From assembly GCF_963853765.1 (NCBI RefSeq), contig NC_088860.1:42656001-42720000 (forward strand): 64,000 nucleotides of DNA, in the 5' to 3' direction. This document shows, piece by piece, positions 6,083 through 59,873 of the stretch. The position numbers were made by a program, and so were the translations under genes. Below the pieces are notes generated by a model. It did not search any database, was not told the DNA's origin, and was given only the letters and a program-made list of their open reading frames with translations. Every line of letters starts with the position of its first letter. Position 1 is the first letter of the stretch. The stretch comes from Magallana gigas (taxonomy: Eukaryota).

Positions 6083-6237
6083 NNNNNNNNNNNNNNNNNN
6101 NNNNNNNNNNNNNNNNNNNNNNNNNNNNNNNNNNNNNNNNNNNNNNNNNNNNNNNNNNNNNNNNNNNNNNNNNNNNNNNNNNNNNNNNNNNNNNNNNNNN
6201 NNNNNNNNNNNNNNNNNNNNNNNNNNNNNNNNNNNNN
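6083..6237. other. Assembly gap (155 N) inside a degenerate (GAT/AAT)-rich tract
   Basis: Run of N flanked by GATGAT-like sequence on both sides. Confidence 0.98.
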
Positions 6238-8590
6238 TAATGATGATGGTGACAGTAATAATTAAGGTGATAATGATTGAACTTTGCTGTTACTAAAGAC
6301 CATTATGATAAGTACGGGGGGAGTTGCCGCTATTGATGATTCTCATGATGAAAAAAGATGGTTAGGGATGATAATGATACGGATCTTCTCGTCGTTATAA
6401 TGATGATGGTGTGATGCTAGTAATAATTCAAGATAATGTGGATATCTATTCTTTCCTCGTTTCAAGTACAGTCGCAATTATAGATTTTTTGTTAATTAGT
6501 CACGCGTTCACCTCATACTAAAAATGATAAGATTGTCTTGTTTTTCCCTTAAACTAAGAAGAAGGCATAGGGCATTGTCATTATGATTCAAAAGGAAGTA
6601 CATCCACAAACGAGAAAATAATTACCTTTCTTTTATACCATATGGGAATTGGGTTTTTTTCAATCACAATGTGTATCCTGAAGCTAAACAGTTGGATAGC
6701 CAGATTTGTGAATTCTGTCTAATTTTCTTTGTGATTTTCTTTCTCTCGATTAATTGCTTATTTATGGGTTTTTGCAGGATAAAAAAACTACCCGTTCCAT
6801 TGAAAATAAATATTATTAGTTTGTGTGCTTATTGTTTTCTACATAATAAAAAAAGTTTGGTTATCATACATTCTTAGGGGGGACATTTTTAATCATGACT
6901 AAATGTACCTGACAAGGACATAGTTCCTGCTTAACTTGCAAAGTATGCATCCATTTTGTGAATGGTTAATATTGAAATTGAGTGCACAGAAAACCTAAGT
7001 ACACGAAACTAGAGAAGCCGAGCCAGTGCAACAGTACTACATCGTTTGACCAAAAATCTCACTTCTTGAAATCATTGAAATCAGACCACTTCAGTATTCA
7101 TCCAGAAATAATTGAAAATATACTTTAATGAAAAGAAAATCAAATCTTTCAGCACCCAGTGAGTCTAGCTAGATTCTTCACATCAAATGTTCTTTAAATA
7201 ATGTTTATATGACCGAGTACACTTTTTCTATATAGATATACCACTGTAGGGCAACTCTAGAAATAACCCGTCCCAGATAACACATGTTACATAAATAGAT
7301 AATACTTAATCTAATCAATGTTGTTTTCTAACTCTTTTACGTAGGAGTCGCGTTCTGTACTGAACGTCTTTTTTCCCCCTTTAATTCATTCAATCTTGGC
7401 TGGAAACGCCACGGCCAAGGGCGTAGTTATTCGACTCAACTGGTCTGCAATACCGAACGAATTCGGATCAAATAAATTCCTGCAAGACCATTTTTTGAGA
7501 AGGGAATTCAATGGAACCCGATGTCAGTTGACGTGTAGAAATACCTGGTATTAATTCTATTGTCGGTTATTAATTCTATCGTCGTTTGCCTGTACCAAGA
7601 AATTAATAAGCCAGTTTGGTTGTTTTGGTCACATATACCATCGCATCACTTGCTTTCTTTCCAGTGGTCGTTTTAATACCATAGATAAATCGCTTTCGGT
7701 TTAACAATATTATTTGTATACGAGATATATTGTTTACCATCTGTCCTTTCTCGATACTAGCGGTACTCTGCATGAAAACTGCATGTCCTTATGTGAGGGT
7801 TGTATATGAAGGTATTAATTCTTAGAATTGAACAGTTCTTGTCAAATAATTTAAATGATAAGTTAGTATACTAAGACCTTACGAGTCATAAATTCCAAAT
7901 ATTACAGCATCTGCGTAAATAAAAATGGAAAAGACATCAATAAGGAATTTAATGAAACTTGCATTATTCAGCATTATGCATTGGCTTTCCTATCGGTACG
8001 TCTAACCGAGGACTGTATGGAGTACCCTTTAATACTGAAAGGTCTGTAGACAGATGCTAGTAGAAGACAAATTACACTGATAGCCAAGAAAAGCGTGAAG
8101 ATCAAATAAAAGTGTACCTGGGTTAGCATCTGATTTTACATTAAGTGTTTCTTTCTTATACTTATTGTAAATTTTTGTGAAAGATTCGGGCATTTCATTT
8201 TTATTTCCTTTTGAACCGTCGGTCCGTCAGACCTCTTTACTGTCACTAGAACTTTATCTACAGTTGCCGAATCATTTTGTAGGATTTGATTTGAGATTAA
8301 TCCTGCTGTAAGGATTATGAATTTTCATGTTACCGTTACAAAAATAACATTCAACGTCATATAGACGGGTATACATGTATTACTTAGTGTCTAAAAATAG
8401 TCGTAAGTATTTTTTACAAAACCCTAATCACATTATGAACGCGCGTCCGATATCTTTGAGATTAAAAACTCTTAACAGTTAACTTTTAACATTATACCGT
8501 TGTTGCTGGACAAGACATGCAAACTAATCTGTACTTTAAACGATTCCATTACCATATTATTTTATCGATTTTCAATGCAATGATGGAATC

Positions 8591-8755
8591 NNNNNNNNNN
8601 NNNNNNNNNNNNNNNNNNNNNNNNNNNNNNNNNNNNNNNNNNNNNNNNNNNNNNNNNNNNNNNNNNNNNNNNNNNNNNNNNNNNNNNNNNNNNNNNNNNN
8701 NNNNNNNNNNNNNNNNNNNNNNNNNNNNNNNNNNNNNNNNNNNNNNNNNNNNNNN
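8591..8755. other. Assembly gap (165 N)
   Basis: Run of N. Confidence 0.98.
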
Positions 8756-10799
8756 ATGCTTTAATGTTCTTTTTTTGAAATTGTGAAAAATTTGGTAGCC
8801 TCTGAAAAATATCTCGAACATTGCGAGACTTTGATAATAAATCTCTATATAGTTTGGAAGTCGCAGATGTATTGTCCTTCCGGATTAACAATGCAAGATT
8901 TATTTTTTGTGACAGAAATAGACAATACACTCACAGTGCGAAACCCATCATCACGCCAATCAAAACCCGCCATCGTCTCCCAGAATGCATATTACAACAC
9001 CCCGGATTGACGATAATGCGGAGAAGAAGAAATATAGTGCCATGAAAGATATCGTAACGCCAACGTCTAAGGATGCCCACGTCAAAACACAAAGAGCTTA
9101 TCGTACATCAATTGATATTTGGTACTACAAGAAATAGTAGAAGGACAATTCAGATAGACAGAAAGAGGACAGATAAAATGAATTCGCCGACACATGCAAT
9201 CACTTATTCCTAGATTTATACTTGATTAAAAAGCCATTGTTGAACCTTTACAGTGAAATGAACACTGTAGATAACGGGTTTTTATTTTGGAAAAAGTACC
9301 AATGTCCTTCAAGTTAGTTAATCATGATCAAATATGTAAGCTCTAGGCTATAAGCGTTGGTGTGACATTGGCTCTGTCCTTTTCTTTTCAATTTTTTTTC
9401 TTGGGGGGGGGGGGGGGGGCTTTTCATCTATCTATACTTACAAATTTACACATTTTGCTAATAAACTACGAAACGCCTACACCAGAGTAACTGCTTACAC
9501 CTTTATTATTTCAACACGTGTGAGATGATGTCCGTATGCTATAAGTGAATTTTGACTCATAATTAATTTTGTGATATTAATCAAAAACCTACTTTCATTT
9601 TCGATAAACAAGCCCGAAATAGCAAAAATGAGAGAAAGATGGTGTACACGCTTTGGCGGATCCAAATCAGTTGGAGTTCGCATCAAAATATATACTTGTA
9701 ATGAAATGATATTTAATGATTACGTAACCAGTGAATGTATTTACTAGGAACTTACTTTTAGATTACATATAGAAGTTAAGATTTGACAAATGTTGAAGAA
9801 AAGAAATAAGGCAATTCGTTTCTTGAATGCGTGATTTAAGTTTGATAGATAGAAGCTAGCGAAGCGCGATCTCTCGCGAGAGTGGAATAGAACATAATGA
9901 TTCCAGAACGAGGTAACAAAGAATGCGGTTTGACTAATTAACGTCATGGTAAAAAGTGTAGGACTAGTTCATCTTGCATCGTATGCAGATAGCTTTGCCT
10001 TGGATGTGACATAAATAAAATGGAACAAATTAATGCGATTACAATTTTGATGGTAAGAATTTTCCAGATTGGTGCGCCCAGGAACGCGGTTTGACTAATT
10101 TTACATCATGTGGAAAGTGAAGGGCGAGTTAACCATCGGTCAGATACTTTGGATATGACAACTTTCATTTAAAATTTGCAAATAGGTATGCAAACACTGA
10201 TATTTTTTAATTTCATACACTTTTATCATTTTTATACCACGACAGATTGGTAGTAAACCATTAATTTGTAAACAATGAACAGATTGTGTTCAAAGTCTAT
10301 AAAATGATGATAAAATGATGTCTATGATATGATGCATGCATTAAACGGGGAAGTTAGTGGGGGGGGGGGGGGGGGTGACCACCCTCTCCAAATGTGGTTT
10401 TTTAAACGGTCTTTTATCTGAAATTCTCATTTGTGGCAGTGATAAAAATTATAGTGAAACTTGACCTAAAGTACAAAATTAATAGAGATACGACGTCCTA
10501 TATACGCATTCAGTGGTTTTAAAAAGTTTTAATTGTTATAATTTCTACTCAGCTGCATCAAGATGAGTTCAGGTCACGTACATGTATATACATCATTTAA
10601 TTCAGTTAAGATGTTTTATCCCTGGTCGCTTATCTAAATATTCAGCGCCTTGAAGTTGTTGGGTTTTTTTTAGTTTTAAAGAATATGTTAAAAAGCATCT
10701 GAGAAACAATTCGGACACAGTACATACGAAAATGAAAAAAATATTTATATAATGGCTCAACATTTTAGCATTGTGTCATTTATGTGTAAAGTGTTAATT

Positions 10800-14565: not shown

Positions 14566-15172
14566 AGTATTGTATTGTTTATTAGTCAACAGCTGTACAG
14601 CTCATAGACATATACAATTAATATACACATGTTATAATACATATACTGGTCACTTGAAAAAGGCAAGTTTATACATGAAGTTTTCTGATTACAAAAGCAT
14701 TCTTAATATATTTACCTAAATTGCACAAATCCTTTACATTTTGTGTTGACAATAATAGAATTAATTTAAAGACAGAGGGTTTAATATAATAAAACTTCTT
14801 AAGGAATTTTTCTCTTAAGTTACAGTAATAGGGACATTTCAATATAAAATGATATTCATCTTCTATATCTAAAGTACATAGAGGACATAAACGTCTTTGT
14901 AATGGAACATTGTTATATCTGCCAGTTTCGATGGTAAGACAATGGGATGATAATCTTAATTTACATATAAGTTTCTTATATTGTAAAGGACTTCTTTTTG
15001 TTAGATATGACTGCAAGGTACAATGATCAACTAAATATCTATAGATTGTACATTTGGAAGAGGCATTTATGTCAGCTAGTAAAGACATATTATTTAAGAT
15101 GCGATACAGATTGATCAAACACTTGAGCATGTAGCTAAATTTAGACTGTTTGTAAATCGTACGAAAGAGCAC
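14566..15172 (-). mobile_element. 5'-truncated non-LTR retrotransposon (CR1/L2-group LINE), ORF2 C-terminus plus 3' tail
   Basis: ORF 14669-15172 contains KLRLSSHCLTIETGRY...RLCPLC...IEDEYHFILKCPYY, the Cys-rich C-terminal motif of CR1/L2-group ORF2. The 3' end reads AATAAACAATACAATAC on the minus strand. Confidence 0.85.
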
Positions 15173-21938: not shown

Positions 21939-22189
21939 CATTAATGATGATGTCATGACAATGGTAAGGGCTGTGGTTGATGATGTTAGTCGAACTTAGG
22001 CCCATTGTAATATCTCAGATTCTTCGGAGTTCTAGATAATAATCGTGATGGTAATAATGGTAATAATAATTGGAGTTGTGGCAATGATAGCTATATACAT
22101 GTAGGTATGTTGGATAAAAAAGGTTGAAGTGGTGGTCATCTTTGTAACACAGGTACAGGAAAGGGGAATATGACTGAAGTCCCACTTAC

Positions 22190-23546
22190 CTTGAAAGTCC
22201 TTCCTGGCTGCACTAATATTGGTAACGATATTGGCAATATGTCCCAAAACAGTGGCAAACAGCAGGAGACCAAACATCATTTCGAATATTATGAAAACGT
22301 ATTGCTGATTGGTTGCTGGCGTTGGCAGGTTGCCAATCGTCGTGAGCGTTAGTGTACTCCAGTAGAGTCCATGCAGGTACGTCCGGAAGACGTCATCCGT
22401 GTCTTTGGGTATCTCCCACGTCCTGGAATCTCGGTCAAGTTTCGTTGCAACGATATAATACAGACACGCATTCCAATGAAATAAAGCCAACAAATAATGC
22501 ATTAACGTCGCAGTCCTCATAAGGTTCGGATAATTAGTATGTCGTTCAGTTCGGTCTAGAAATGCCCAGAATCTATAAACTTTAACAAGTCGAAAACAAC
22601 GCAAAATTGAGCAAAATCCAATGGAGAGATAAAGGAAATCCAGTGGCAACAGACACAAGCAGTCAATGTAAAAGATAGTGCTATTGGTATAATGTATACG
22701 GAGTTTAGTCGTGTCTGTTTGTAACACCCCGTCTTCAAGGTAACCCGTGCGGAAGTGGAAAGCCACGTCCAAAATGTACAGCAAATCAGCCGTATAGTCC
22801 AGAATAAACCAGAACGCCAAATTCTCACTACTTATTTCTCGGAATGCAAATCGGTAAATGATCACCCAAAAGTTGTACAGGAATGCAATACTGACGATGG
22901 AGGACCACCAGTAGGCGAGCCGCCCTGAGGGGTCAAACACAAAGGTCCAGTTACACCCATCCCGGTCCGTGGAGTTCGTGAGGGTCTCGAATTTGTCTGT
23001 TCGGTGACTCTTTTTGCCGAACTTCTCTTCGATATCCTTTTTTCGCTGTTTGCGCAGTTCCCTTGGCGTTATTATATCCCCTGAACGAACTTTTTTCAAC
23101 AGTTGCAAATCTCCGCGTGCTGCGAAACTCTTTGAGCGCGCCTTTCTGTCTATGCGCGTACCGAACAGATCTAGGAGGCTATTTTTGGACGTAGACCGTG
23201 ATTTTTGCTCAACTGTTTTGTTGGAGTATGCGGGGGAAGATAAACTGATTCTCCCTGTTAAACTGGAAGAACTCATTCGATCTCCCACAATCCTCCATCT
23301 AGAATGAGGATTGTTAAAAACCCCGGAGTTGGAAGGAAGATGGCGCGGTCCATTTGCTGTTTGGTTGGCCATCTTTTCGTTTTTGTAATCATCGTTCGGT
23401 AACGGTTTCTTTTCTTTATTTATGACGGCTATTTCCTCTTCCACATTGTCCTCGTCTGTATGCTCGTCTGTTTTTGCACAGGGTGTGTATTTCACGGTGA
23501 CACCAGAATCACTAGCGCGCTTGCGTGCATTCAACGTAATAGACAT
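22190..23546 (-). CDS. Cyclic-nucleotide-gated channel alpha-type subunit: exon encoding N-terminus, S1-S6 and pore (partial gene)
   Basis: Translation has FVFDPSG (pre-S1), FRTGYLEDG, S4 ILRCFRLVK, TNYPN, pore YWSTLTLTTIGNLPTP, and S6/post-S6 LFATVLGHIANIVTNISAARKDFQ. Acceptor TTTTTTTTCTCGAATTGCAG directly precedes the ATG at 23546; phase-1 donor AAG|GTAAGT at 22190/22189. From memory it resembles the Drosophila CG42260-type CNG subfamily. Confidence 0.93.
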
Positions 23547-25685
23547 CTGCAATTCGAGAAAAAAAATGTTCGTGTCTTCTCCTGATTATTTGTTTTGCAT
23601 TCCGTCGCTATTTGCTTAGCATAGTTATCATATTTGATGCATCCAAAGCGTATTGAGTAATTTACTGATTAAAACAAGGACGACAATATTTTTATTTCTT
23701 CCCCCGAATGATAGTTGTAAAACAAAAACAACAATATATCAGCCCAGCTAAGCTGCAAGCTTTGTTTTCTGATGACTGTCAACTTGGATAAGGAAATAAT
23801 AAGCGCCGCAGCACCGATGACAATTAAGTCAGCAGCCGATTTCCGAATCACAGGCCAGATTTTAGAGGAATTCCATGAGGAATTCACCAGTCTCAGCCTG
23901 GATTGGCATTTGAGGTAAAGGCGCTAAATTTTCCGGACGACTCTGTGCTTTGGAAGTATTTGAAACGCACACAATAGCCTGGAGACATATTCTTTTATCA
24001 GATCATGGTGAATAATCCCTGTAAAAGAGCTTGTTTGCACGCAATTCTGTCACACGCGCGAGTTTGTCGTTGAACTGAAGGGAGTCTTCGGTGGGAAGTT
24101 GCACACTTCGTGTAGTAACGTAAATTCAGTGTCCGCTTCCTCGGCAACATATGGTGTTTTCTGAACTAAGTCGGTCGCTCTTTTATCGACAAAACCTGCA
24201 AGTCTTACTGGAAAGGCTAAGTTCTCCATTCAAAACACCATCGCATATCGGCAGTGCGCCGGTCATTATTACTCGATAGTCCAATAAGTTCTGTAGCTGT
24301 GTTTGTATCTCTGTATCTCTGCATAAAAAAAGGTTAAAGGATTGAGAATTAATGGGAGGTTTGTGCATATACTTGAGGTAAAACGATCGGTGATTGTTGT
24401 ACGAGCGGATTGAACACACCACGTCTATTAATTGTCAATATAACAGCGATGTCACACGCTTGTTTGCCGAGTTGAAGTATCGACAAAAATTTGATATACG
24501 ATAAAAGCCGGCCCATTGATATATACCTATGCAGTTTTTTCCCCTCCGGATTAAAATTCACTATACGGTATGGGTTTTAACTTCTATAAAACGGTGGTTT
24601 GCTTATGTCCTATACTTGGAAAATTTTGCGGATTTATTACTTATTTATAGATTAGAGACACAATATTAGAGTGGCTTTTGTTCTTCAGCTATGCCGTCCA
24701 CAACAATGAAATTATTACATCTTTTCAACCTACTCAAAATATTCACAATATGTACGAAATGACGCCCAACTTTGTAGATGAATAGGGAAGATATATATCT
24801 AATAGAAATCTACCCACATATGCAACACAGACTTTAACTAACTAACGCCCGTATATGTTTTATCGCTGGGAGCCATTTCTAATTATAATCGAAACTTTAA
24901 TACAGACGATCAAATTTAATGATATATCGGGGTAACAGATGGTTCGCCATCACTCTGTTCTATATTGTGAGCTCAATCCCATTCTAGAACTTCCTTATTT
25001 ACCTTAATATAAACAAAAAAACCAACAACAAAAAATATAAGAAGACCGCAAATTATTTTTCACATCCATACCCTACACCTGGTGTTCAGTAGGAAAATTC
25101 TGTGTTAAATTTGCTTAAATGTCGAGGTCATTTTTATAGGCTACATTATTAATCTCATTTAGAAAAATAGTTAGCTCTGTGATAAAGATAAAGAAAAATA
25201 TAAAATTAAAAAGTTTTGCAATTTTCATTTACCTAATAAAAGTTTACGACCAAAATTATGATATACCCAGAGCTGTAAATCAATTCTGACGGTAAGTGTG
25301 TTAACCATCCACAGTCCTATAGACCGCTGTAGTACGTGTGATTTAGTGGACCCGAACTGCACATTGCTGTTTAGATAACTGCATGCTTTAAAATTCTTTT
25401 TTATTTATATGTTTGTGTTGGAATGTGGGAGATGTTTTAGATATACCGGTAGTCATTTTGACAGAAATGCGTACATGTAAGTTTGTTGAAGATCGACATA
25501 GATAGATGTTTTATTTCAAATCAATACAACACCTGTAAGAATTTTTAAAAATATATATATGGAAGACCCCCTCCGAAAAAAATAGAGAGATAGAGCATGC
25601 TTTTTTATCATCTCTCGCTAAGGACACTGTAGTTGCTTCTTCTAGATATATTTCTCGTACATAAGCCCTCAGGATAGTAGAGTTC

Positions 25686-28461
25686 TGCTCACACTATTTT
25701 TGGACCGCTCGCAGTATTACGGGACCGCTTGTACTATTACTGGACCGCTCACACTATAACTGGACCGCTCACACTATCACTGGACCGCTCACACTATAAC
25801 TGGACCGCTCGTACTATCACTGGACCGTTCGGCCGCTCACACTATCACTGGACCGCTCGTACTATCACTGGATCGCTCGTACTATCACTGGACCGCTCAC
25901 ACTATCACTGGACCGTTCACACTATCACTGGACCGCTCACACTATAAGTGGACCGCTCACACTATCACTGGACCGCTCACACTATCACTGGACCGCTCAC
26001 ACTATAACTGGACCGCTCACACTATAAGTGGACCGCTCACACTATAACTGGACCGCTCACACTATCACTGGACCGCTCACACTATCACTGGACCGCTCAC
26101 ACTATAAGTGGACCGCTCACACTATAACTGGACCGCTCACACTATCACTGGACCGCTCACACTATCACTGGACCGCTCACACTATAAGTGGACCGCTCAC
26201 ACTATCACTGGACCGCTCACACTATCACTGCACCGCTCACACTATAACTGCACCGCTCACACTATAACTGGACCGCTCACACTATAACTGGACCGCTCAC
26301 ACTATCACTGGACCGCTCACACTATAACTGGACCGCTCACACTATCACTGGACCGCTCACACTATCACTGGACCGCTCACACTATAAGTGGACCGCTCAC
26401 ACTATAACTGGACCGCTCACACTATCACTGGACCGCTCACACTATAATTGGACCGCTCACACTATCACTGGACCGCTCACACTATAAGTGGACCGCTCAC
26501 ACTATAACTGGACCGCTCACACTATCACTGGACCGCTCACACTATCACTGGACCGCTCACACTATCACTGGACCGCTCACACTATAAGTGGACCGCTCAC
26601 ACTATCACTGGACCGCTCACACTATAAGTGGACCGCTCACACTATAACTGGACCGCTCACACTATAACTGGACCGCTCACACTATCACTGGACCGCTCAC
26701 ACTATAATTGGACCGCTCACACTATCACTGGACCGCTCATACTTTCATCACACTATCACTGGACCGTTCACACTATCACTGGACCGTTCACACTATCACT
26801 GGACCGCTCACACTATCACTGGACTGCTCACACTATCACTGGACCGCTCACACTATCACTGGACCGCTCACACTATAAGTGGACCGCTCACACTATAACT
26901 GGACCGCTCACACTATCACTGGACCGCTCACACTATCACTGGACCGCTCACACTATAAGTGGACCGCTCACACTATAACTGGACCGCTCACACTATCACT
27001 GGACCGCTCACACTATCACTGGACCGCTCACACTATAAGTGGACCGCTCACACTATCACTGGACCGCTCACACTATCACTGCACCGCTCACACTATAACT
27101 GCACCGCTCACACTATAACTGGACCGCTCACACTATAACTGGACCGCTCACACTATCACTGGACCGCTCACACTATAACTGGACCGCTCACACTATCACT
27201 GGACTGCTCACACTATCACTGGACCGCTCACACTATAAGTGGACCGCTCACACTATAACTGGACCGCTCACACTATCACTGGACCGCTCACACTATAATT
27301 GGACCGCTCACACTATCACTGGACCGCTCACACTATAAGTGGACCGCTCACACTATAACTGGACCGCTCACACTATCACTGGACCGCTCACACTATCACT
27401 GGACCGCTCACACTATCACTGGACCGCTCACACTATAAGTGGACCGCTCACACTATCACTGGACCGCTCACACTATAAGTGGACCGCTCACACTATAACT
27501 GGACCGCTCACACTATAACTGGACCGCTCACACTATCACTGGACCGCTCACACTATAATTGGACCGCTCACACTATCACTGGACCGCTCATACTTTCATC
27601 ACACTATCACTGGACCGTTCACACTATCACTGGACCGTTCACACTATCACTGGACCGCTCACACTATCACTGGACTGCTCACACTATCACTGGACCGCTC
27701 ACACTATAAGTGGACCGCTCACACTATCACTGGACCGCTCACACTATAAGTGGACCGCTCACACTATAACTGGACCGCTCACACTATAACTGGACCGCTC
27801 ACACTATCACTGGACCGCTCACACTATAATTGGACCGCTCACACTATCACTGGACCGCTCATACTTTCATCACACTATCACTGGACCGTTCACACTATCA
27901 CTGGACCGTTCACACTATCACTGGACCGCTCACACTATCACTGGACCGCTCACACTATCACTGGACCGCTCACACTATAAGTGGACCGCTCACACTATCA
28001 CTGGACCGCTCACACTATAATTGGACCGCTCACACTATCACTGGACCGCTCACACTATTACTGGACCGTTCACACTATCACTGGACCGCTCACACTATCA
28101 CTGGACCGCTCACACTATCACTGGACCGCTCACACTATAAGTGGACCGCTCACACTATAACTGGACCGCTCACACTATAACTGGACCGCTCACACTATCA
28201 CTGGACCGCTCACACTATAATTGGACCGCTCACACTATCACTGGACCGCTCATACTTTCATCACACTATCACTGGACCGTTCACACTATCACTGGACCGC
28301 TCACACTATCACTGGACCGCTCACACTATCACTGGACCGCTCACACTATCACTGGACCGCTCACACTATCACTGGACCGCTCACACTATCGCTGGACCGC
28401 TCACACTATCACTGGACCACTCGCACTATCACTGGACCGCTCACACTGTTAAAGGACCGCT
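25686..28461. repeat. 20-bp minisatellite, about 136 units, with higher-order structure
   Basis: Unit TGGACCGCTCACACTAT + (CAC/AAC/AAG/AAT). An 11-nt insertion TACTTTCATCA occurs at 26740, 27591, 27862 and 28253. Both ends are degenerate. Confidence 0.98.
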
Positions 28462-39560: not shown

Positions 39561-39595
39561 TGTAATAAGTAAAGTATATCTGTCTTTGAATATAT

Positions 39596-40098
39596 TGTAA
39601 CGTGTTTTGTCCTGGGTTCTCAGGGATAATATATGCAATAAATTTAAACTCTACCTGAGTTAATAATGATTAGTACAATGATTTTTCTCTAATTGGGTAA
39701 CGTTTAAATCACTATCAATCATAAATGGGGATAATGTGTGAGGTGGGCTTTCAGTACTGTGTGTCTATACCCGGTTCCTATTGAGAGAGAGATACTTGGT
39801 GTCTCAATCTTCTTCAGATTTACTACACCAAGCACCTCACCTCAATTCCCAGGGTTTCTTGCCACTAGTTTCTATTCAACCCTACCTCTTAACTCTTCTA
39901 TCTTTCTTCTTTCTATTTTCTTTCTATCTATCTTGTCCTTTCTACTCCGCTGTTCACAGACGACTCCCCCACACTCTACAGCACAGCTGTTTATATAACC
40001 TTGGAGTAGTCCACTCCAAGGGTAGTCAGGTTATTCCATTTCCCCCACCCAAATCTAATTCATCACAACGTTTATTATAATAAGGCATAATCATTACA
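39596..40098 (-). repeat. 3' LTR (503 bp)
   Basis: Matches 43105-43612 except for one substitution and one net 5-nt indel. Confidence 0.95.
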
Positions 40099-40115
40099 TT
40101 ACCCACGCCTCTTTT
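40099..40115 (-). other. Polypurine tract candidate
   Basis: Minus strand AAAAGAGGCGTGGGTAA (14 of 17 purines) immediately upstream of the 3' LTR. Confidence 0.6.
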
Positions 40116-40300
40116 ACCATGCGTCCCGCATGTCTACTGATTTTTATTTTTAACCAAATTTTTTTTTCAAAGGTATTTAAAATATTTATTTTTCAAATAT
40201 AAATTACAAAACTAACATAACTTTCTGTTATTGGCTGAAATAAGACAACTAGTCTCGCCATAAATCAATTACTGTTCTTTGAGAGTTTGTTTCCTTTGAA

Positions 40301-40764
40301 TTAATCAAACCAAGTGTCCTCTTCAAATTTCTCAATATTTTCACCATTCTCTTGATATTTTCTAATTACTCTGATAATCTTCTGGTGGCCTCTCTTCTTT
40401 TGATCATCGACCTTAAAGTTGGTCTGCGTTCCAACGTCTACTTTTTCCCTCCCAACAGCCCTACAACAAGAGCAATGACTCGCTTTCAGGGGTCCTTCTT
40501 GGGACGTCGTTTCACAGATCTCTATTTCTACCTCAGGTTCTTTACCCTGTCCCTCTGACAATACTGGCTCTTCTTTTACAGCTTTGCGTTTGACACCTGG
40601 CAATCTTGGGGTGGTTCTCTTTCGGTATGTTCTTCCGACCTCCACTTCGTCAAATATCAACTCTCCAGGGTCTTTATCCCAATCTTCATCTTCTCCAACA
40701 CTCTTTGGTGTAGACTGAATCTGGTCTTTGGTGGCTGTTTTCACTTGGTCGTCACCGTGGACTC
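40301..40764 (-). CDS. Acidic/charged tail of the element's accessory zinc-finger ORF, separated from ORF1 by a 1-nt frameshift
   Basis: Open frame ...VHGDDQVKTAT...EDEDWDKDPGEL...GRTYRKRTTP...DVGTQT...EEDTWFD*. It joins ORF1 if one A is added near 40765. Confidence 0.75.
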
Positions 40765-42825
40765 TTTGATGTGCCTGGTTAAAATTGTCTTTTTCCCAAA
40801 GGCCTGATCACAAAACTCGCATTCAAACTTCCTTTTGGACATGTCTTCCAAACCACAAGCTAACAAATGTTTACTCCACTCATCTTTTGACTGAAGTCGA
40901 AACAAGCATCTAGTACTCAGATATTCTGGTTTTCTAGCTGTCGATTTTTCATTATTTTCTGTCAATCTAATATGGGAACACCCAATGTGGCCTTGTAACT
41001 GTAATTCATGCTCCACCCCTTGTATATACATTTTACTTTGAGATACGTCTATTACACAATGGCTTGATTTCAGAAATTCAAGCCCTAAAATTCCGTCGGC
41101 TTTAATGTTGGCAACAACAGCTGTACATTCAAACTTATACTCCCCTAGTTGGATTTTAAAATTTCCTTTTCCTTTCACTGACAAAGGAGTTCCATCTGCA
41201 CTAACTATGTTTTGTGCAACTGTTTCCAAAGTAATAGGACCAGCCTTTTCCATGCTCTCAAATATTCTATCGGCTAGAATTGTCAATGTTGCGCCGGTAT
41301 CAACAAGCAAATTGCATGGAACCATGTCTACAAGCGCGTTAATAAACAAACCAGATTCTGTACTGACTGAAGCATTCTTAACAGTGGCTGTGTTCGACTT
41401 TGTATCATGGCTTTTATTCTTGAACTGAGTTTCACAATGTTCACCTGGTTTAGATTTAGCAGCTTTCTTTTGAGCGTGTTCTTGGTTTAACTTAATAAAG
41501 CAATCTTTGATTTTATGTCCACGCCTTCCGCAGTGATGGCATTTAAAAGGGAAGTGATCGACATGCACTGCATCGGTATCATTTGATTTGTCTGCTTCCT
41601 TACTTGCAGATAATTTTGATATTTTATTCTCCAGATCTCTCATGGACTGTTGAATTTCCTGACGAAGCTTCATAATTTCTTCATTTACATCAATGCTACT
41701 CTGTGGAGAAGACGTATTTGTATCTACCACGTCCATTGTAGCACCACGAGCAAATCCGACGTCATGTCTACGTTGACGCTCGGCTCTACAGAACGCTTCT
41801 ATTTCGACTGCTAATCTGATGGCATCATTCAGAGATTTAGGACGGGACTGTTGAATACGCAGTCGCATGTCAAAATTCGACAGCGCATCAATGAACTGAT
41901 CTTTGGCAATCATTTCAGTTACATCCCTTGGTGCCGTAGGGTATGCAAGATGAGTCAAGCGACGTATGCTTTCCCCTAGCTCTGGTAAAGTCTCTGTCGC
42001 TTTTTGGCGTTTTTCCCTAAGCATTGCTCGGTACAACTCGGTCTGATTAACAGGTGCAAACCTTGCCTCTAATGCATCACATAAATCCTCATATGTGAAA
42101 ACTGTGCCTGTTTTTATGTTTCCGAGTACAGTCTGTGCTTGTCCTCTTAAAGATGCTGCCAAGTATAAACTCTTCTGTCGAGGATTCCACAAGTTAATAC
42201 TACAGCAGGCTTCGAAATGAGCTTTATAGTCTATCCATGAGGAAGTGCCATCAAATGTTGCCGGTTTCATGATAGTTTTACCCATATTATTATCTACAAG
42301 ATTGTTTTCAGTGTTACCTTGTGAGTTAACACTCCGATTAAAGACCTGGTTTGAATGTGGTATATCATTCCATGCACCATGTCTTGATGTCCAAGTAACA
42401 CTTGTTGTCGTTGATGTGGCACCGAGACTGTGTGTACTATGTGGAAAACTACCTGCGAGTAGCGTTTCCGAAAAATGTGGTTGTTCAATTGATCGAGGGT
42501 TTAAGTAATCACTATTCGCTTTGTACGTTTCTTGACTTGTTTCCCCTCGATAAATAGAGAAATCTGACTTTGGATATTTTGAATAACCAAAATTCTCCGC
42601 TGTGTCCGATTTAACATTTGCACTTGCAGTGTTTGCATACTGAGATGATCTATCATCCATACTTGCATCATATTTTGGTCTTACATCTACCCCGGAATCT
42701 GGTATCATAGAAGGATTAGATGTATATGGCGTAGACCTCAATCTATCCAATGTCTCTTTTAGCTTCTCACGTCTAGCATCTATTACGCTAAGATCAGCCC
42801 AAAGTTCAGCTTCTTTGTCATTCAT
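40741..42825 (-). CDS. gag-pro: Gag (capsid + CCHC knuckle)-aspartic protease-zinc finger polyprotein, 694 aa
   Basis: Capsid-like KPATFDG...W...L.G.A...RF...Q...E.L...AYP...QFIDAL (about 42270-41790); knuckle CHHCGRRGHKIKDC (41500-41541); protease LVDTGA (DTG at 41293-41301) with ILGLEFL; then S-x2-C-x12-H-x3-C and C-x2-C-x12-H fingers. Confidence 0.93.
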   Translation of the reverse strand: MNDKEAELWADLSVIDARREKLKETLDRLRSTPYTSNPSMIPDSGVDVRPKYDASMDDRSSQYANTASANVKSDTAENFGYSKYPKSDFSIYRGETSQETYKANSDYLNPRSIEQPHFSETLLAGSFPHSTHSLGATSTTTSVTWTSRHGAWNDIPHSNQVFNRSVNSQGNTENNLVDNNMGKTIMKPATFDGTSSWIDYKAHFEACCSINLWNPRQKSLYLAASLRGQAQTVLGNIKTGTVFTYEDLCDALEARFAPVNQTELYRAMLREKRQKATETLPELGESIRRLTHLAYPTAPRDVTEMIAKDQFIDALSNFDMRLRIQQSRPKSLNDAIRLAVEIEAFCRAERQRRHDVGFARGATMDVVDTNTSSPQSSIDVNEEIMKLRQEIQQSMRDLENKISKLSASKEADKSNDTDAVHVDHFPFKCHHCGRRGHKIKDCFIKLNQEHAQKKAAKSKPGEHCETQFKNKSHDTKSNTATVKNASVSTESGLFINALVDMVPCNLLVDTGATLTILADRIFESMEKAGPITLETVAQNIVSADGTPLSVKGKGNFKIQLGEYKFECTAVVANIKADGILGLEFLKSSHCVIDVSQSKMYIQGVEHELQLQGHIGCSHIRLTENNEKSTARKPEYLSTRCLFRLQSKDEWSKHLLACGLEDMSKRKFECEFCDQAFGKKTILTRHIKESTVTTK

Positions 42826-43091
42826 TTTAAATTTTCTATTTCTACACTAATACAAAAATACTACACAATTTTCTAATTCTTTTATTCTTATCGTTCACAA
42901 ATTCAAAATTCAGATACACGGTTTCTTTGAACCTGGTACACACTACCCGGTAACACTTCACTTGGTTCAAAGCACCCGGTAACAATGCACTCGGTATCCA
43001 GTTCCTAATACAAACGCTATATGATGATTCAAGAACAACAAAATTAAATTTATTAAATCAACGAAATCACTGATATTTTATCCCCGAACCG

Positions 43092-43101
43092 GCTGCCACC
43101 A
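43092..43101 (-). other. Primer-binding site, probably tRNA-Leu
   Basis: Minus strand TGGTGGCAGC, 3 nt after the 5' LTR; complementary to the ...GCUGCCACCA 3' end of metazoan tRNA-Leu(AAG/UAG), recalled from known sequences. Confidence 0.8.
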
Positions 43102-43104
43102 AAA

Positions 43105-43612
43105 TGTAACGTGTTTTGTCCTGGGTTCTCAGGGATAATATATGAAATAAATTTTCCTCTAACTCTACCTGAGTTAATAATGATTAGTACAATGATTTTT
43201 CTCTAATTGGGTAACGTTTAAATCACTATCAATCATAAATGGGGATAATGTGTGAGGTGGGCTTTCAGTACTGTGTGTCTATACCCGGTTCCTATTGAGA
43301 GAGAGATACTTGGTGTCTCAATCTTCTTCAGATTTACTACACCAAGCACCTCACCTCAATTCCCAGGGTTTCTTGCCACTAGTTTCTATTCAACCCTACC
43401 TCTTAACTCTTCTATCTTTCTTCTTTCTATTTTCTTTCTATCTATCTTGTCCTTTCTACTCCGCTGTTCACAGACGACTCCCCCACACTCTACAGCACAG
43501 CTGTTTATATAACCTTGGAGTAGTCCACTCCAAGGGTAGTCAGGTTATTCCATTTCCCCCACCCAAATCTAATTCATCACAACGTTTATTATAATAAGGC
43601 ATAATCATTACA
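43105..43612 (-). repeat. 5' LTR (508 bp)
   Basis: TGTAAC...ATTACA; minus-strand TATATAAA about 110 nt into the LTR. Confidence 0.95.
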
Positions 43613-44691
43613 ATATCTATCAATTTATCTAGATATTTTGAGGTATTTGTTGATGTATACTACCTTTTAAATAGACACTGTTCATATACGTTAGCTTCTT
43701 AAACATAGTGTTTATGTAACTGATAGGGGCATCGTATTTTTATTTAACATATAGGGATATAAAAAAATATCATGATTATGATGTTACCAAAACGATATAC
43801 TATTAACTGTTTTGTTCCGTTATATATGTGAGTGCTTATGTACTAAATTCTTGTAGAAAAATGAAATTTCACCTTTAACGTTATATTGTATCACACAATT
43901 CTAAACAAATATCGCTTTCCTTTTCAAAACATTTTAAACAATTGATAATCACTTGTCAGCCTCATTATTTTTTATTGGTCGTCATTATGGGTAGTTCATA
44001 AGGACGTACGTTAACTTTGTTTTATTAATGCACAGGCAAATAAGATTGTTGTGTAACGGTGGGAGGACATGCTCATCCAAAAATAAATACAAGCAAAAGA
44101 AAAATAGACATCATAAACTATTTTCGATCCTTTCATGCCAATTATTTAAAAGCTCCCCAAAAGTAGACAGTCAAACTCCATGTAAATTCACTTTTATACG
44201 TTATTTTTTTTATAATGTACATGTAGGCTGCGAGAAAGAGTGCCCCCACCCCCCAACTGATGCTACGCGCCTGATCAACATTTAAATGTTCCGGCGAATC
44301 AACAAATCCAGTAAAACTTCAATTATTATGATTGAATTAGCAATTCAACTCATAGAAAATTCTACAGCAGTGTTTAATAATTTAATAATTGTTTTTGTTG
44401 TCATTTTATTGATGCAAATTACAATTTGAACAGTAGCGATGCACCGCCATTAAGTTTTGTTTCATGTTAGAAATGAATCTAAAGATTAAACTTATTCAGA
44501 TTAACATACGAACATGTGTCCTTTTTTATTTACAAAATATGTTGTAATAAATTCCTCACAGTATAAACTTTTTACTGTAGATTTGAATGAAATAGATTTA
44601 GACAATTGCAAACTTCGCCGCCCTCCCTCTTGATCCGCCGATGCATTTAATGCAAAACAAAAGTACACTTTCTTTCTGGATAAAACCCACG

Positions 44692-46788
44692 ATGGCGACC
44701 GGAAGAAAACCAGTCAACAAACACGTTGTTTTCAACTGTACAATCTGTTTGCAGCAGATAGTTAAACCCAGATGTCTACCCTGTTCACATACTTTCTGTG
44801 AAGAATGTCTGCAGCATTTCATATCCAGGGAAGCAATTGGGAAAGAAGAGTCGAGTTTTGAGTTTAAATGTCCGATATGTCGCCGTGTATCTAGGTGTCC
44901 CGAGCAGGGAGTTCCCGTAGAGGAATGGGCGAAACATTTTCCAGCCAATCTATTACTTAATTCTCTGACCACATCTGTGGAGGAGCAATCTCAGGATAAA
45001 TTGTGTGCAATGTGTGTACGTGATAACAAACACGTAAAAGCAGAGTATTTGTGTAACGATTGCCGCGAGTTGATATGTGCGGCTTGTAAAGGTATTCACA
45101 AAATTAATGTCATTCTACAAAAGCACAAAATATCAGCAATTAATATGAAAGATCTAGATGACGACCTGCAGTTTCCAGACGTGGACGAACCTTGCCATAT
45201 ACATCAAGGTAAATTCGTGGAGGTATTTTGTCTGGATCATGACACGTTATGCTGCAGCATCTGCTTTGCTACCAAGCATAGACATTGTGAGCGTGTAGAA
45301 GCAATTGATGAAATCGTTAAAAGAATAGAGAAGTCAAACGTTGACAGGAACATTCAGGTTCTATCTAAAATAGCCCAGGTAACTAAAGAAATAGTAGAAA
45401 ACAAGGAACGCACGATTAGAGAATCTAATGCGAGAAAGGAAACAATCCTATCAAACGTTTCTTATGAAATTGAGAACCTAAAAACCAAGCTTGATGAATG
45501 TCAACAACAGTTTGAGAAAAATTTCTTAAAATTACACGAAGAAAATGAAGAAAGACAGAAGGAATGCGTCCTGGATTTAAAACACTTCTTGCTGACCATC
45601 AGAAATGGAGAGTCACTTTTATCTGCAGTTCAAGGGAAGGGTTCCACAAAGCAGACCTTTATAACGGCCATGAAAATAATTACTGATTTAGAAGAACAGT
45701 TCCAACAACACAAAGCCAACTACTTAGAAGATGAAGAGGTTCAGTACGAACATGACCACACAATCATACTCAAACAAGTGTGTGAGCAAGACAAAATAGA
45801 AGATGTCACCATGGTGAGAAGACCATCAGGGATCATCTGGAATCTATCAATGCATTTGTCATCTTTTGGAATCCTTGAGAATATAGAACAGAGACAATTC
45901 ACGGCATTTTATCAAAGCGTCACTAATCCTGCAAAACTGAAGGCGAAGAAAGAGTCCGAGTTTCAGATTTCGGGATCAGCACATCAAGGGGTTTTTGTTG
46001 ATAACGAAACACTTGTATTAGCCTTCTCATCTCCAGCTTCTCTGAAAGTATTTAATTCCAATTACACTGAGATGTCATTTGATTCTCCAATTGAACTGAA
46101 TGGGAAAATAAGCCTTTATGCAAGCCCTACCAAAACTATGTTGTATGTTGGGTGTATGTCGTCAGTTTATAAACTGAAGATTGTAAAGAAAAACGTGAGT
46201 GCTATTGGAGCCACGTGTAAGACTGAATTCAATGTGAAAGAATTTTTTGACATTTTTTGCGTGGATGAAGAGCAAAATAGGATTGTGGTTGCAACACGGG
46301 CTAAAATTACAATTATCACACTTTTGCCTATTTGTAATGTTCAAACAGTAGTAGTTCCGAGTCCTGAAACAGTTGCTTTACCACTACTTTGTTTAACTCA
46401 AGACCGATTAGCTTGCGTGAGTGGACAAACGGTAATTTGTTTTTCACTGTCTGGTCAGAAATTGTTCCAATTTCAAATTCCTAAGGTCCAAAGCATCAGA
46501 TGTATTACCTTTGATCCTTTAAAAAACGTGTATTGTGGGTATAGAAGCTATCAGGGATGCAAAAAGTACTGCGACAATTTAGGTTGGGGTGAATGTAACA
46601 ATTGTTTCAAGCCTCAGTGTGATCACAAGGACTTAAATGGAGTGTTTCAGATTCAGAGTGATGGCATTAACGGGCGATCTTTTATTACAGAGTACCCGGA
46701 TGCCCAGTGTTTAATCTTTGATGAGTATTCCGAACAATTTGTGGTCTCTAATGGAAATAAATGTACTGTCTACAGGCTCTGTATTTGA
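44692..46788 (+). CDS. Intronless TRIM E3 ligase (RING-HC, B-box 1, B-box 2, coiled coil, degenerate beta-propeller/NHL-like C-terminus), about 698 aa
   Basis: RING CTIC...CSH.FC..C...CPIC (44737-44880); B-box 1 CAMC...C.DC...IC..C...H...H; B-box 2 C..H...FC..H...CC..C...H; helical coiled-coil region; beta-rich tail. ATG at 44692 has a strong context (ACG ATG G); in-frame upstream ATGs exist from 44641. Confidence 0.92.
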   Translation: MATGRKPVNKHVVFNCTICLQQIVKPRCLPCSHTFCEECLQHFISREAIGKEESSFEFKCPICRRVSRCPEQGVPVEEWAKHFPANLLLNSLTTSVEEQSQDKLCAMCVRDNKHVKAEYLCNDCRELICAACKGIHKINVILQKHKISAINMKDLDDDLQFPDVDEPCHIHQGKFVEVFCLDHDTLCCSICFATKHRHCERVEAIDEIVKRIEKSNVDRNIQVLSKIAQVTKEIVENKERTIRESNARKETILSNVSYEIENLKTKLDECQQQFEKNFLKLHEENEERQKECVLDLKHFLLTIRNGESLLSAVQGKGSTKQTFITAMKIITDLEEQFQQHKANYLEDEEVQYEHDHTIILKQVCEQDKIEDVTMVRRPSGIIWNLSMHLSSFGILENIEQRQFTAFYQSVTNPAKLKAKKESEFQISGSAHQGVFVDNETLVLAFSSPASLKVFNSNYTEMSFDSPIELNGKISLYASPTKTMLYVGCMSSVYKLKIVKKNVSAIGATCKTEFNVKEFFDIFCVDEEQNRIVVATRAKITIITLLPICNVQTVVVPSPETVALPLLCLTQDRLACVSGQTVICFSLSGQKLFQFQIPKVQSIRCITFDPLKNVYCGYRSYQGCKKYCDNLGWGECNNCFKPQCDHKDLNGVFQIQSDGINGRSFITEYPDAQCLIFDEYSEQFVVSNGNKCTVYRLCI

Positions 46789-55753: not shown

Positions 55754-59873
<4,120 letters not shown>

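What the first reader, a model, noticed from the sequence alone, without database searches (positions are those of the whole stretch)
39596..43612. Young LTR retroelement with complete cis signals and Gag-protease but no RT, RNase H or integrase
Seen: near-identical LTRs, intact ATAT TSD, tRNA PBS, PPT and an uninterrupted 694-codon ORF in only 3.0 kb of internal sequence, with no YxDD, RNase H or integrase motifs. Knowledge: LTRs are identical at insertion and integration creates the TSD; Gag-retaining non-autonomous elements (TR-GAG) are described in plants. Inference: either this short form was itself mobilised in trans, i.e. a capsid-supplying parasite of an autonomous partner, or pol was deleted soon after insertion.
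Basis: partly seen in the sequence, partly recalled or inferred. Interest (0 to 1): 0.8.

Follow-up and report, generated by a model that had tools for sequence, protein, structure and literature searches.

The report
Pol-less oyster retrotransposon keeping Gag, protease, zinc-finger
This is a recently inserted copy of a parasitic oyster retrotransposon that has lost its copying enzymes but keeps its capsid, protease and a zinc-finger accessory gene fused into one reading frame, and similar stripped-down forms have arisen repeatedly in bivalves.

Summary
A 4,017-bp LTR element lies on the minus strand at 39596-43612. Its LTRs match at 501/503 bases plus one 5-bp indel. It has TG..CA ends, an ATAT target-site duplication, a PBS, a PPT and a 694-codon Gag-CCHC-protease ORF. 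No RT, RNase H or integrase similarity occurs anywhere in the window.

- The last ~70 codons plus the next 147-codon ORF are not junk. They are a two-zinc-finger "ORF3", which in autonomous Ty3/gypsy relatives (L003, L012) sits after integrase.
- The window ORF is cut short by one frame break at about 40765-40768. Other copies carry an intact 841-codon Gag-PR-ORF3 fusion.

Other copies that are 4-9% diverged share the same junction. They show dN/dS of about 0.26 in both Gag-PR and ORF3. The window's own LTRs differ by only 0.4%. The deletion is therefore much older than this insertion, so the copy was mobilised as a short form and was not deleted in place.

Pol-less Gag-PR-ORF3 fusions with different junctions occur in several bivalve lineages. 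One origin is rejected (AU p = 2e-42).

An autonomous family with near-identical PBS, PPT and LTR tips is present in C. gigas and is a candidate helper. That role is not proven. I class this as a new variant of a known kind.

The parts
39592..39595 (.). Target-site duplication ATAT (left copy)
   Evidence: Read directly from the sequence. It is identical to 43613-43616.
39596..40098 (-). 3' LTR (503 bp), with TG..CA ends
   Evidence: 501/503 identity to the other LTR plus one 5-bp indel.
40099..40115 (-). Polypurine tract AAAAGAGGCGTGGGTAA abutting the 3' LTR
   Evidence: The same block occurs in L001, L002, L005, L006, L010 and L012.
40118..40132 (-). Conserved palindrome CATGCG-GGA-CGCATG just upstream of the PPT
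   Evidence: Present in L002. L012 has CGTGCG-GGA-CGCACG, a change on both sides that keeps the pairing. The fold on its own is not significant (z = -1.9).
40301..40744 (-). Second piece of the ORF3-derived module (147 codons): an acidic stretch, the GRTxRKRTxPxxPGVKRK basic motif, HCSCC, and the C-terminal IIRVIRKYQE..EEDTWFD
   Evidence: It is 94% identical to residues 687-841 of the intact P0274. It is homologous to the free-standing ORF3 of L003, L012, P0259 and P0263.
40765..40768 (-). Frame break inside the second (C2H2) zinc finger. The window copy differs in length by one base from L001, L005 and L006 at this point.
40741..42825 (-). 694-codon ORF: Gag, CCHC knuckle, retropepsin and the N-terminal part of ORF3
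40945..40953 (-). Deletion junction, resolved to within about 10 nt. The end of the protease region is joined to about codon 4-5 of ORF3, and RT, RNase H and integrase are absent.
   Evidence: the left arm aligns to L010 up to 8133 and the right arm from L010 10012.
41056..41340 (-). Retropepsin domain (residues 496-590, with the DTG motif at about 41293-41301)
   Evidence: PF13975 and PF13650 score above their cut-offs.
41500..41544 (-). CCHC zinc knuckle of the nucleocapsid (residues 428-442)
   Evidence: The Cys and His residues are invariant in the alignment.
41953..42156 (-). Capsid-like Gag core (PF03732, residues 224-291)
   Evidence: This is the most conserved block.
43088..43101 (-). 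Primer-binding site TGGTGGCAGCCGGT, after a TTT spacer
   Evidence: The same 14 nt occur in L002, L004 and L010, and with one mismatch in L012. L011 and L013 share the first ten bases and then read TGGTGGCAGCGGTGGGAT.
43105..43612 (-). 5' LTR (508 bp)
   Evidence: The junction between the LTR end and the flank is also present in contigs L008 and L009 from other sequencing runs.
43613..43616 (.). Target-site duplication ATAT (right copy)

Best explanation
The feature is a non-autonomous Ty3/gypsy (Metaviridae) LTR retrotransposon of an oyster. It belongs to a 'short-form' lineage in which an internal deletion removed RT, RNase H and integrase. The deletion fused Gag-nucleocapsid-protease in frame to the element's 3'-terminal accessory gene, ORF3. 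ORF3 has two classical zinc fingers, an acidic/basic linker and a conserved C-terminal hairpin.

Shown:
- The deletion long predates this insertion.
- The short form has diversified under purifying selection on both Gag-PR and ORF3.
- This copy therefore entered its site as a short form, by reverse transcription and integration (near-identical LTRs, 4-bp TSD).
- After insertion, or in its immediate parent, the fusion ORF acquired one frame break.

Inferred:
- The short form makes its own Gag-PR-ORF3 protein, which acts preferentially on the RNA that encodes it (packaging, particle formation, and perhaps nuclear or target functions through the fingers).
- It borrows RT, RNase H and integrase from an autonomous relative that recognises the same PBS, PPT and LTR tips.
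- The L012/P0006-type family present in C. gigas is the candidate helper.
- The deletions most likely arose by template switching at short homologies. Only in-frame Gag-PR-ORF3 fusions survived.
For: Structure:
- LTRs, TSD, PBS, PPT and domains are all present.
- There is no Pol similarity in the window.

The 3' module is ORF3 of autonomous relatives:
- L003 has Gag-PR, RT-RH-IN, then a 221-aa ORF3.
- L012 has an intact 1045-aa Pol and a 225-aa ORF3.
- Free-standing ORF3 proteins occur in O. edulis, Saccostrea and M. gigas.
- The fingers match solved tandem C2H2 fingers with E down to 6e-13.

The short form is older than the insertion:
- L001 (95.7%) and L005/L006 (about 91%) are colinear through the junction, against 0.4% divergence between the window's own LTRs.
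- An intact 841-aa fusion ORF (P0274) exists in the same 90% cluster. There are about 10, 6 and 6 distinct cluster members.

Selection after the deletion (window versus L005):
- Gag-PR: dN/dS 0.26, dS 0.205, Fisher p = 1e-14.
- Tail: dN/dS 0.27, p = 5e-4.

Same LTR family with RT-RH: L010 in O. edulis.

Candidate helper:
- L012 has PBS TGGTGGCAGCTGGTT, the same 12-nt LTR end and the same PPT.
- C. gigas protein P0006 is 92-93% identical to L012's Gag-PR and RT.

Recurrence:
- Junctions differ between lineages.
- The tree needs at least 8 changes, and the AU test rejects a single clade at p = 2e-42.
- A Mytilus edulis genomic copy has a 782-bp LTR segment at 99.5% identity (a second, 554-bp segment at 97.1%), a 744-aa contiguous ORF and no Pol.

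Microhomology at junctions is seen.
Against: - No second locus with a different TSD could be fetched from the same genome. The tools cannot scan an oyster assembly.
- The other copies are short-read contigs of unknown species.
- Helper dependence, particle formation and cis action are untested.
- The nearest intact Pol found belongs to a family whose Gag is only 49% identical to this one. Co-assembly with that helper is therefore uncertain. The same-family Pol-bearing copy (L010) is degenerate and lacks the integrase core.
- This particular copy can no longer make the full fusion protein.
- Non-monophyly on a Gag-PR tree could partly reflect recombination rather than new deletions. The differing junctions argue against that.
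Confidence: 0.8

Rival explanations
1. A full-length element inserted here and lost pol by a deletion at this locus soon afterwards.
For: A single copy cannot by itself distinguish the two alternatives. Internal deletions are common in this family: L010 lacks only the integrase core.
Against: The same junction occurs in copies 4-9% diverged in both internal sequence and LTR. This copy's LTRs differ by only 0.4%. Coding constraint has acted across that divergence.
Confidence: 0.02
2. Assembly artefact: pol was collapsed out of the assembly.
For: Repeats are prone to collapse.
Against: At least three distinct contig sequences from four sequencing runs reproduce the same 3.0-kb internal structure. 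Two further contigs reproduce the junction between the LTR and the flank.
Confidence: 0.01
3. The short form began as a reverse-transcribed spliced subgenomic RNA (the mRNA for ORF3) rather than by a deletion or template switch.
For: Autonomous relatives keep a pyrimidine tract plus AG 13-20 nt upstream of the ORF3 start: L003, L010 and L012. ORF3 has its own conserved start, MPLTK.TPRKPG. A spliced ORF3 message is therefore plausible.
Against: The window junction falls about 4-5 codons inside ORF3, not at that AG. The short form L011 retains the pyrimidine tract and AG. L002's junction sits at a TATGTTC microhomology. No conserved GT occurs at the left breakpoints: L003 and L012 lack it.
Confidence: 0.1
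4. The Gag-PR-zinc-finger gene is a host-domesticated retroelement gene (PEG10-like, or a restriction factor), not a mobile parasite.
For: There is purifying selection on the ORF. Gag-PR domestications are known in mammals.
Against: It is flanked by near-identical LTRs with a TSD, PBS and PPT. It occurs in many diverged copies with their own LTRs. This copy is frame-broken, and other copies carry different breaks.
Confidence: 0.03

Closest known systems
TR-GAG and GAG/PROT-only non-autonomous LTR retrotransposons of plants (Coffea, Arabidopsis, sugar beet)
   Same: These have LTRs, a PBS and a PPT with an internal ORF for Gag (sometimes Gag plus protease). They lack RT, RNase H and integrase, and are regarded as semi-autonomous and mobilised in trans (PMC13570524, sections 32 and 42).
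   Different: This element is from an animal (a bivalve). It also keeps a third, non-Gag module (the zinc-finger ORF3) fused in frame. Here there is direct evidence of purifying selection after the deletion and of repeated independent origin.
Mouse IAP 1-delta-1 proviruses
   Same: An internal in-frame deletion creates a novel fusion protein. The element is non-autonomous and needs proteins in trans. The fusion protein acts in cis, and this subtype causes most new insertions (PMC6466679, section 8).
   Different: The IAP deletion removes parts of gag and pol and leaves the rest of pol. Here the whole RT-RH-IN region is missing and Gag-PR is joined to an accessory ORF. Cis action is only inferred here.
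BARE-2/BARE-1 (barley) and ETn/MusD (mouse) parasite-helper pairs
   Same: Non-autonomous LTR elements share LTR, PBS and PPT signals with an autonomous partner (PMC13570524 section 37; PMC6466679 section 11).
   Different: BARE-2 lacks functional Gag and ETn has no coding capacity. This element keeps Gag, protease and ORF3 under selection.
Three-ORF Ty3/gypsy elements (errantiviruses with env; rotifer LTR elements with captured extra ORFs, PMC5408684, seen only as a search hit)
   Same: The autonomous relatives (L003, L012) carry a separate third ORF after integrase, probably expressed from its own message.
   Different: ORF3 here is a soluble two-zinc-finger protein, not an envelope protein. 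No transmembrane or signal features were seen. Pfam gives only zf-C2H2.

Membership tests
LTR retrotransposon, Ty3/gypsy (Metaviridae) | Direct LTRs with TG..CA ends, flanked by a 4-6 bp target-site duplication | tested here: met
   503/508-bp LTRs, 99.6% identical, with an ATAT TSD.
LTR retrotransposon, Ty3/gypsy (Metaviridae) | A PBS next to the 5' LTR and a PPT next to the 3' LTR | tested here: met
   Both are conserved in diverged relatives. The identity of the tRNA was not tested.
LTR retrotransposon, Ty3/gypsy (Metaviridae) | Gag with a CCHC knuckle, followed by retropepsin | tested here: met
LTR retrotransposon, Ty3/gypsy (Metaviridae) | Pol domain order PR-RT-RNase H-integrase, with the RT grouping with Ty3/gypsy | tested here: inconclusive
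   The element itself has no RT. Its Gag-PR relatives L003 and L012 have RVT_1, RT_RNaseH, Integrase_H2C2 and rve in that order. No RT phylogeny against reference clades was made.
Non-autonomous Gag-retaining LTR element (TR-GAG sense) | No RT, RNase H or integrase coding sequence between the LTRs | tested here: met
   tblastn with the 1045-aa Pol gives no hit in the window. Pfam agrees.
Non-autonomous Gag-retaining LTR element (TR-GAG sense) | The internal region codes for Gag only | tested here: not met
   It also codes for protease and the zinc-finger ORF3 module.
Non-autonomous Gag-retaining LTR element (TR-GAG sense) | The short form itself is amplified (several copies share the deletion) | tested here: met
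   L001, L005 and L006, plus cluster members, share the junction. Genomic copy number and TSDs in this genome were not obtainable.
Non-autonomous Gag-retaining LTR element (TR-GAG sense) | Mobilised by an autonomous partner sharing its cis signals | not testable with these tools
   Candidates were found: L012/P0006-type in C. gigas and L010 of the same LTR family in O. edulis. Dependence needs an experiment.
Domesticated Gag-PR host gene (PEG10-like) | Single-copy, without LTRs, at a conserved syntenic position | tested here: not met
   LTRs and a TSD are present, and there are many diverged copies with their own LTRs.
Errantivirus-like element with env | The third ORF encodes a membrane glycoprotein | tested here: not met
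   ORF3 matches only C2H2 fingers. The AF2 model shows two fingers, disorder and a beta hairpin.

The most novel reading that the evidence does not exclude
In one ORF3-bearing Ty3/gypsy clade of bivalves, pol-less derivatives that fuse Gag-PR in frame to the zinc-finger ORF3 have arisen many times (at least 8 on the tree). They persist under purifying selection. If so, Gag, protease and ORF3 are cis-acting 'private goods' that a retroelement cannot outsource, while RT, RNase H and integrase are 'public goods' that cheaters exploit. ORF3 would then be a previously unrecognised essential accessory factor of metaviruses.
Probability: 0.35. Interest if true: 0.75.

Novelty: new variant of a known kind. 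Interest (0 to 1): 0.55.

Why it matters
Non-autonomous LTR elements that keep Gag are documented mainly in plants. The best-studied animal case is the mouse IAP 1-delta-1. This oyster element adds an animal example with an unusual three-part fusion: Gag, protease and a zinc-finger accessory protein.

Three points make it useful:
- There is sequence evidence that the fusion has been maintained by selection after pol was lost.
- Comparable fusions with different breakpoints have arisen independently in oysters, mussels and other bivalves.
- This forms a natural replicated experiment on which retroelement functions must be supplied in cis and which can be borrowed.

It also flags a conserved, uncharacterised ORF3 as a likely functional component of a large bivalve retrotransposon clade. 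In practice, such elements will be mis-annotated as host 'CCHC-type' or 'zinc finger protein 407-like' genes, as several database names found here show.

Tried and rejected
- An exact-protein look-up of the window ORF found nothing.
- tRNA scans of the window and five loci found no tRNA gene, so the primer tRNA is unidentified. From memory, the 18-nt PBS of the distant relatives L011 and L013 matches the 3' end of metazoan tRNA-Leu(AAG). The oyster PBS shares only the first 10 nt. This is not a tool result.
- A literature search for the PBS string was uninformative.
- Four literature searches for this architecture in bivalves found no description.
- The RNA fold of the region upstream of the PPT was not significant.
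- The AF2 model of ORF3 was too weak overall (pLDDT 60, pTM 0.24) to justify a fold search.
- A TSD for the Mytilus copy L013 could not be fixed, because the LTR start is ambiguous.
- Host-gene capture as the origin of the finger was considered first. It was rejected once ORF3 was found downstream of integrase in L003 and L012.
- A splicing origin was examined and is disfavoured.
- No intact Pol of the window's own LTR family was found. The only Pol more than 58% identical to L003's was P0284, at 88%.
Full report
**1. Observation**

The window carries direct repeats at 39596-40098 and 43105-43612. They match at 501 of 503 aligned bases, plus one 5-bp indel. They begin with TG and end with CA. 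ATAT flanks them on both sides.

The only long ORF between them is on the minus strand (42825..40741, 694 codons). The element is therefore in minus orientation. In that orientation:
- The 5' LTR is followed by TTT and then TGGTGGCAGCCGGT.
- The 3' LTR is preceded by AAAAGAGGCGTGGGTAA.

Pfam finds a retrotransposon Gag core, a CCHC knuckle and a retropepsin domain in the ORF. tblastn with an intact 1045-residue RT-RNase H-integrase protein of a relative finds nothing anywhere in the 64 kb.

**2. Host and locus**

The window is identical to GCA_963853765.1, record OY970752.1, positions about 42.69-42.71 Mb (L007). To my memory this accession is the Pacific oyster Magallana (Crassostrea) gigas. 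UniRef M. gigas proteins 91-92% identical to the element's tail fit that.

The element lies 1.08 kb upstream of an intronless RING/B-box gene (44692-46785), in the opposite orientation. Two contigs from other sequencing runs (L008, L009) contain the same junction between the LTR end and the flank. That boundary is therefore not an assembly artefact.

**3. What lies 3' of the protease**

The ORF does not end with the protease. Its last ~70 codons contain a C2H2 finger that stops halfway through. The next frame continues as a 147-codon ORF (40744..40301).

Close relatives read straight through:
- P0001 has 783 aa and P0274 has 841 aa.
- Against P0274, the window matches residues 1-687 at 42825-40765 and residues 687-841 at 40768-40304.
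- Contigs L001, L005 and L006 all differ in length by one base at that point.

The window copy therefore carries a single frame break inside the second finger. The family's real product is a fusion protein of about 841 residues.

The key to the 3' module came from an 8.4-kb cDNA contig (L003, with SMART adapters at both ends). It has Gag-PR, then RT, RNase H and integrase, then a separate 221-codon ORF3.

ORF3 has these features, in order:
- An N-terminus MPLTKVTPRKPG.
- A C2HC finger and a C2H2 finger.
- An acidic stretch ending in WxxDPGEL.
- A basic GRTxRKxTxPxxPGVKRK motif.
- HCxCC.
- A C-terminal ..IIRVxRKxQxxGExVExxEEDIWND.

The window's finger and tail are homologous to this ORF3 along its whole length.

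The same ORF3 follows an intact 1045-residue Pol in L012. It also occurs as annotated stand-alone proteins in Ostrea edulis, Saccostrea and M. gigas.

A profile of 14 ORF3 sequences matches solved tandem C2H2 fingers (INSM1, ZNF568, CTCF) with E down to 6e-13. AlphaFold gives two finger units, a long disordered linker and a C-terminal beta hairpin, at modest confidence.

The missing segment therefore runs from just after the protease to about codon 4-5 of ORF3.

**4. Was the short form itself mobilised?**

Three short-read contigs from other samples consist of 'internal region plus one LTR'. L001 is 95.7% identical to the window element, and L005 and L006 about 91%. All are colinear through the junction in a single alignment. 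Their LTRs are 92-95% identical to the window's.

The window's own two LTRs differ by only 0.4%. The junction is therefore far older than this insertion, and the copy must have been reverse-transcribed and integrated as a short form. The 'deleted after insertion' reading and the mis-assembly reading are rejected.

The protein clusters hold about 10, 6 and 6 distinct members. These include M. gigas proteins with different lesions, so the family is multi-copy.

I could not retrieve a second locus with its TSD from the same genome. None of the tools scans an oyster assembly.

**5. Selection**

Between the window lineage and the L005 lineage, which share the junction:

| Region | Codons | dN/dS | dS | Fisher p |
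|---|---|---|---|---|
| Gag-PR | 623 | 0.26 | 0.205 | 1e-14 |
| ORF3 up to the finger | 49 | 0.30 | - | 0.011 |
| Tail | 147 | 0.27 | - | 5e-4 |

These values include neutral decay after each insertion, so constraint on the active lineage was stronger than they suggest. Both Gag-PR and ORF3 have therefore been needed by the short form during its spread. That is the basis for inferring that its protein acts on its own RNA. No experiment supports this yet.

**6. Relatives with pol, and a candidate helper**

L010 (O. edulis chromosome OX387705.1) belongs to the same LTR family:
- Its LTR is 79% identical to the window's, with the same PBS, spacer and PPT.
- Its Gag is 77-87% identical to P0274.
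- It carries RT and RNase H plus ORF3, but lacks the integrase core and is riddled with stops.

L012 is a complete autonomous element:
- It has a near-identical PBS (one mismatch), the same 12-nt LTR end and the same PPT.
- Its Gag is only 49% identical to the window's.
- C. gigas protein P0006 is 92-93% identical to L012's Gag-PR and RT, so this family is present in the Pacific oyster.

L012's family is the best available candidate supplier of RT and integrase. A closer, unsampled partner remains possible. No intact Pol of the window's own LTR family was found.

**7. Recurrence**

Fusions of Gag-PR to ORF3 without RT also occur in more distant lineages at 35-50% identity: P0005/L002, P0018/L011, P0039, P0038, P0122, P0121, P0013/L013, P0049 and P0088.

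The junctions differ:
- L002 keeps about 12 more post-protease codons and starts ORF3 near codon 17, at a TATGTTC microhomology.
- L011 joins 27 nt upstream of the ORF3 start and keeps the pyrimidine-AG motif.
- P0039 joins at the start codon.
- P0122 keeps about 50 post-protease codons.

On a 95-sequence Gag-PR tree the short forms are scattered among RT-bearing forms. At least 8 changes are forced by well-supported branches. The AU test rejects a single clade (delta lnL 391, p = 2e-42).

L013 is a Mytilus edulis genomic copy with these features:
- Its LTRs align as two segments, 782 bp at 99.5% and 554 bp at 97.1% identity.
- Its PBS is TGGTGGCAGCGGTGGGAT.
- It has a contiguous 744-codon ORF.
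- It has no Pol.

A caveat applies: some database proteins are gene models, and recombination could move Gag-PR between lineages. The differing breakpoints are the stronger argument for independent events.

**8. Origin mechanism**

Autonomous relatives keep a pyrimidine tract plus AG 13-20 nt upstream of the ORF3 start. This suggests ORF3 is normally expressed from a spliced message.

The short-form junctions do not coincide with that site, and no conserved GT marks the left breakpoints. Template switching or microhomology-mediated deletion, followed by selection for in-frame fusions, therefore fits better than retrotransposition of a spliced RNA. I put the splicing origin at about 0.1.

**9. 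Comparison with known elements**

Functionally the element resembles:
- Plant TR-GAG and GAG/PROT-only non-autonomous families (PMC13570524).
- The mouse IAP 1-delta-1, whose in-frame deletion product acts in cis and which causes most new IAP insertions (PMC6466679).

It is not a TR-GAG in the strict sense, because it also encodes protease and ORF3 and is from an animal. It is not a domesticated gene, because it has LTRs and a TSD and occurs in many diverged copies. ORF3 is not an env.

Four full-text searches found no description of this architecture in bivalves. Curated repeat libraries could not be consulted.

**10. Verdict**

The element is a new variant of a known kind: a recently inserted, now frame-broken member of a selected Gag-PR-zinc-finger short-form lineage. 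Its independent counterparts across bivalves make it moderately interesting (0.55).

Noticed in passing
window 25687-28447: A 20-bp satellite array of about 139 copies (unit GCTCACACTATCACTGGACC). It has locally high G+C (0.52) and a strongly negative GC skew.
   Followed up: no
window 57904-58810: Complex purine-rich tandem repeats with nested periods of 42 to 265 bp and a strong positive GC and AT skew. The region produces spurious repetitive ORFs.
   Followed up: no
window 44692-46785 (+): An intronless 698-aa RING/B-box (TRIM-like) gene lies 1.08 kb from the element's 5' LTR, in divergent orientation. The exact protein is on record in the NCBI assembly and in Logan contigs.
   Followed up: partly
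window 22032-23552 (-): A 506-codon ORF whose second half looks, by eye, like the transmembrane part of a cyclic-nucleotide-gated or ion-channel exon. It was not checked with any tool.
   Followed up: no
window 14669-15172 (-): A 167-codon ORF containing a CPLC...HFILKCP motif. By eye this is reminiscent of the C-terminal region of non-LTR retrotransposon ORF2 proteins. It was not checked.
   Followed up: no
window 6083-6237 and 8591-8755: Two runs of N (155 and 165 bases). They were left as they are.
   Followed up: no
window 40118-40132; L012 about 7041-7060; L002 about 3259-3275: A palindrome just upstream of the PPT is conserved. The L012 version shows a change on both sides that preserves pairing (CATGCG..CGCATG versus CGTGCG..CGCACG). 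This may be a structured element near the PPT. The single-sequence fold is not significant.
   Followed up: partly
L003 about 6338-6352; L012 about 6078-6092; L010 about 9965-9980: A pyrimidine tract followed by AG lies 13-20 nt upstream of the ORF3 start codon in three pol-bearing relatives. It looks like a splice acceptor for a subgenomic ORF3 message.
   Followed up: partly
L010 4141-11335 (O. edulis OX387705.1): A third architecture in the same LTR family: Gag-PR-RT-RNase H joined to ORF3, with the integrase core missing and about 1.5 kb of extra sequence in the leader. The copy is heavily degenerate.
   Followed up: partly
window about 40870-40935 (residues about 630-652); P0005: The first (C2HC) finger of ORF3 is intact in free-standing ORF3 proteins and in distant short forms. 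It has lost a zinc ligand in the window family, and two in the L002 family. The second finger is invariant in all 14 sequences.
   Followed up: partly
P0180, P0258 (UniRef M. gigas): P0180 joins the CCHC region directly to the ORF3 tail. P0258 lacks the acidic middle of ORF3. These are either further deletion variants or gene-model artefacts. Several copies are named in databases as host 'CCHC-type' or 'zinc finger protein 407-like' proteins.
   Followed up: no
L003 1990-1992; L012 2885-2887: Each autonomous relative has one in-frame stop between Gag-PR and Pol, but at different positions, and L010 has none there. These are more likely individual lesions than programmed read-through.
   Followed up: partly
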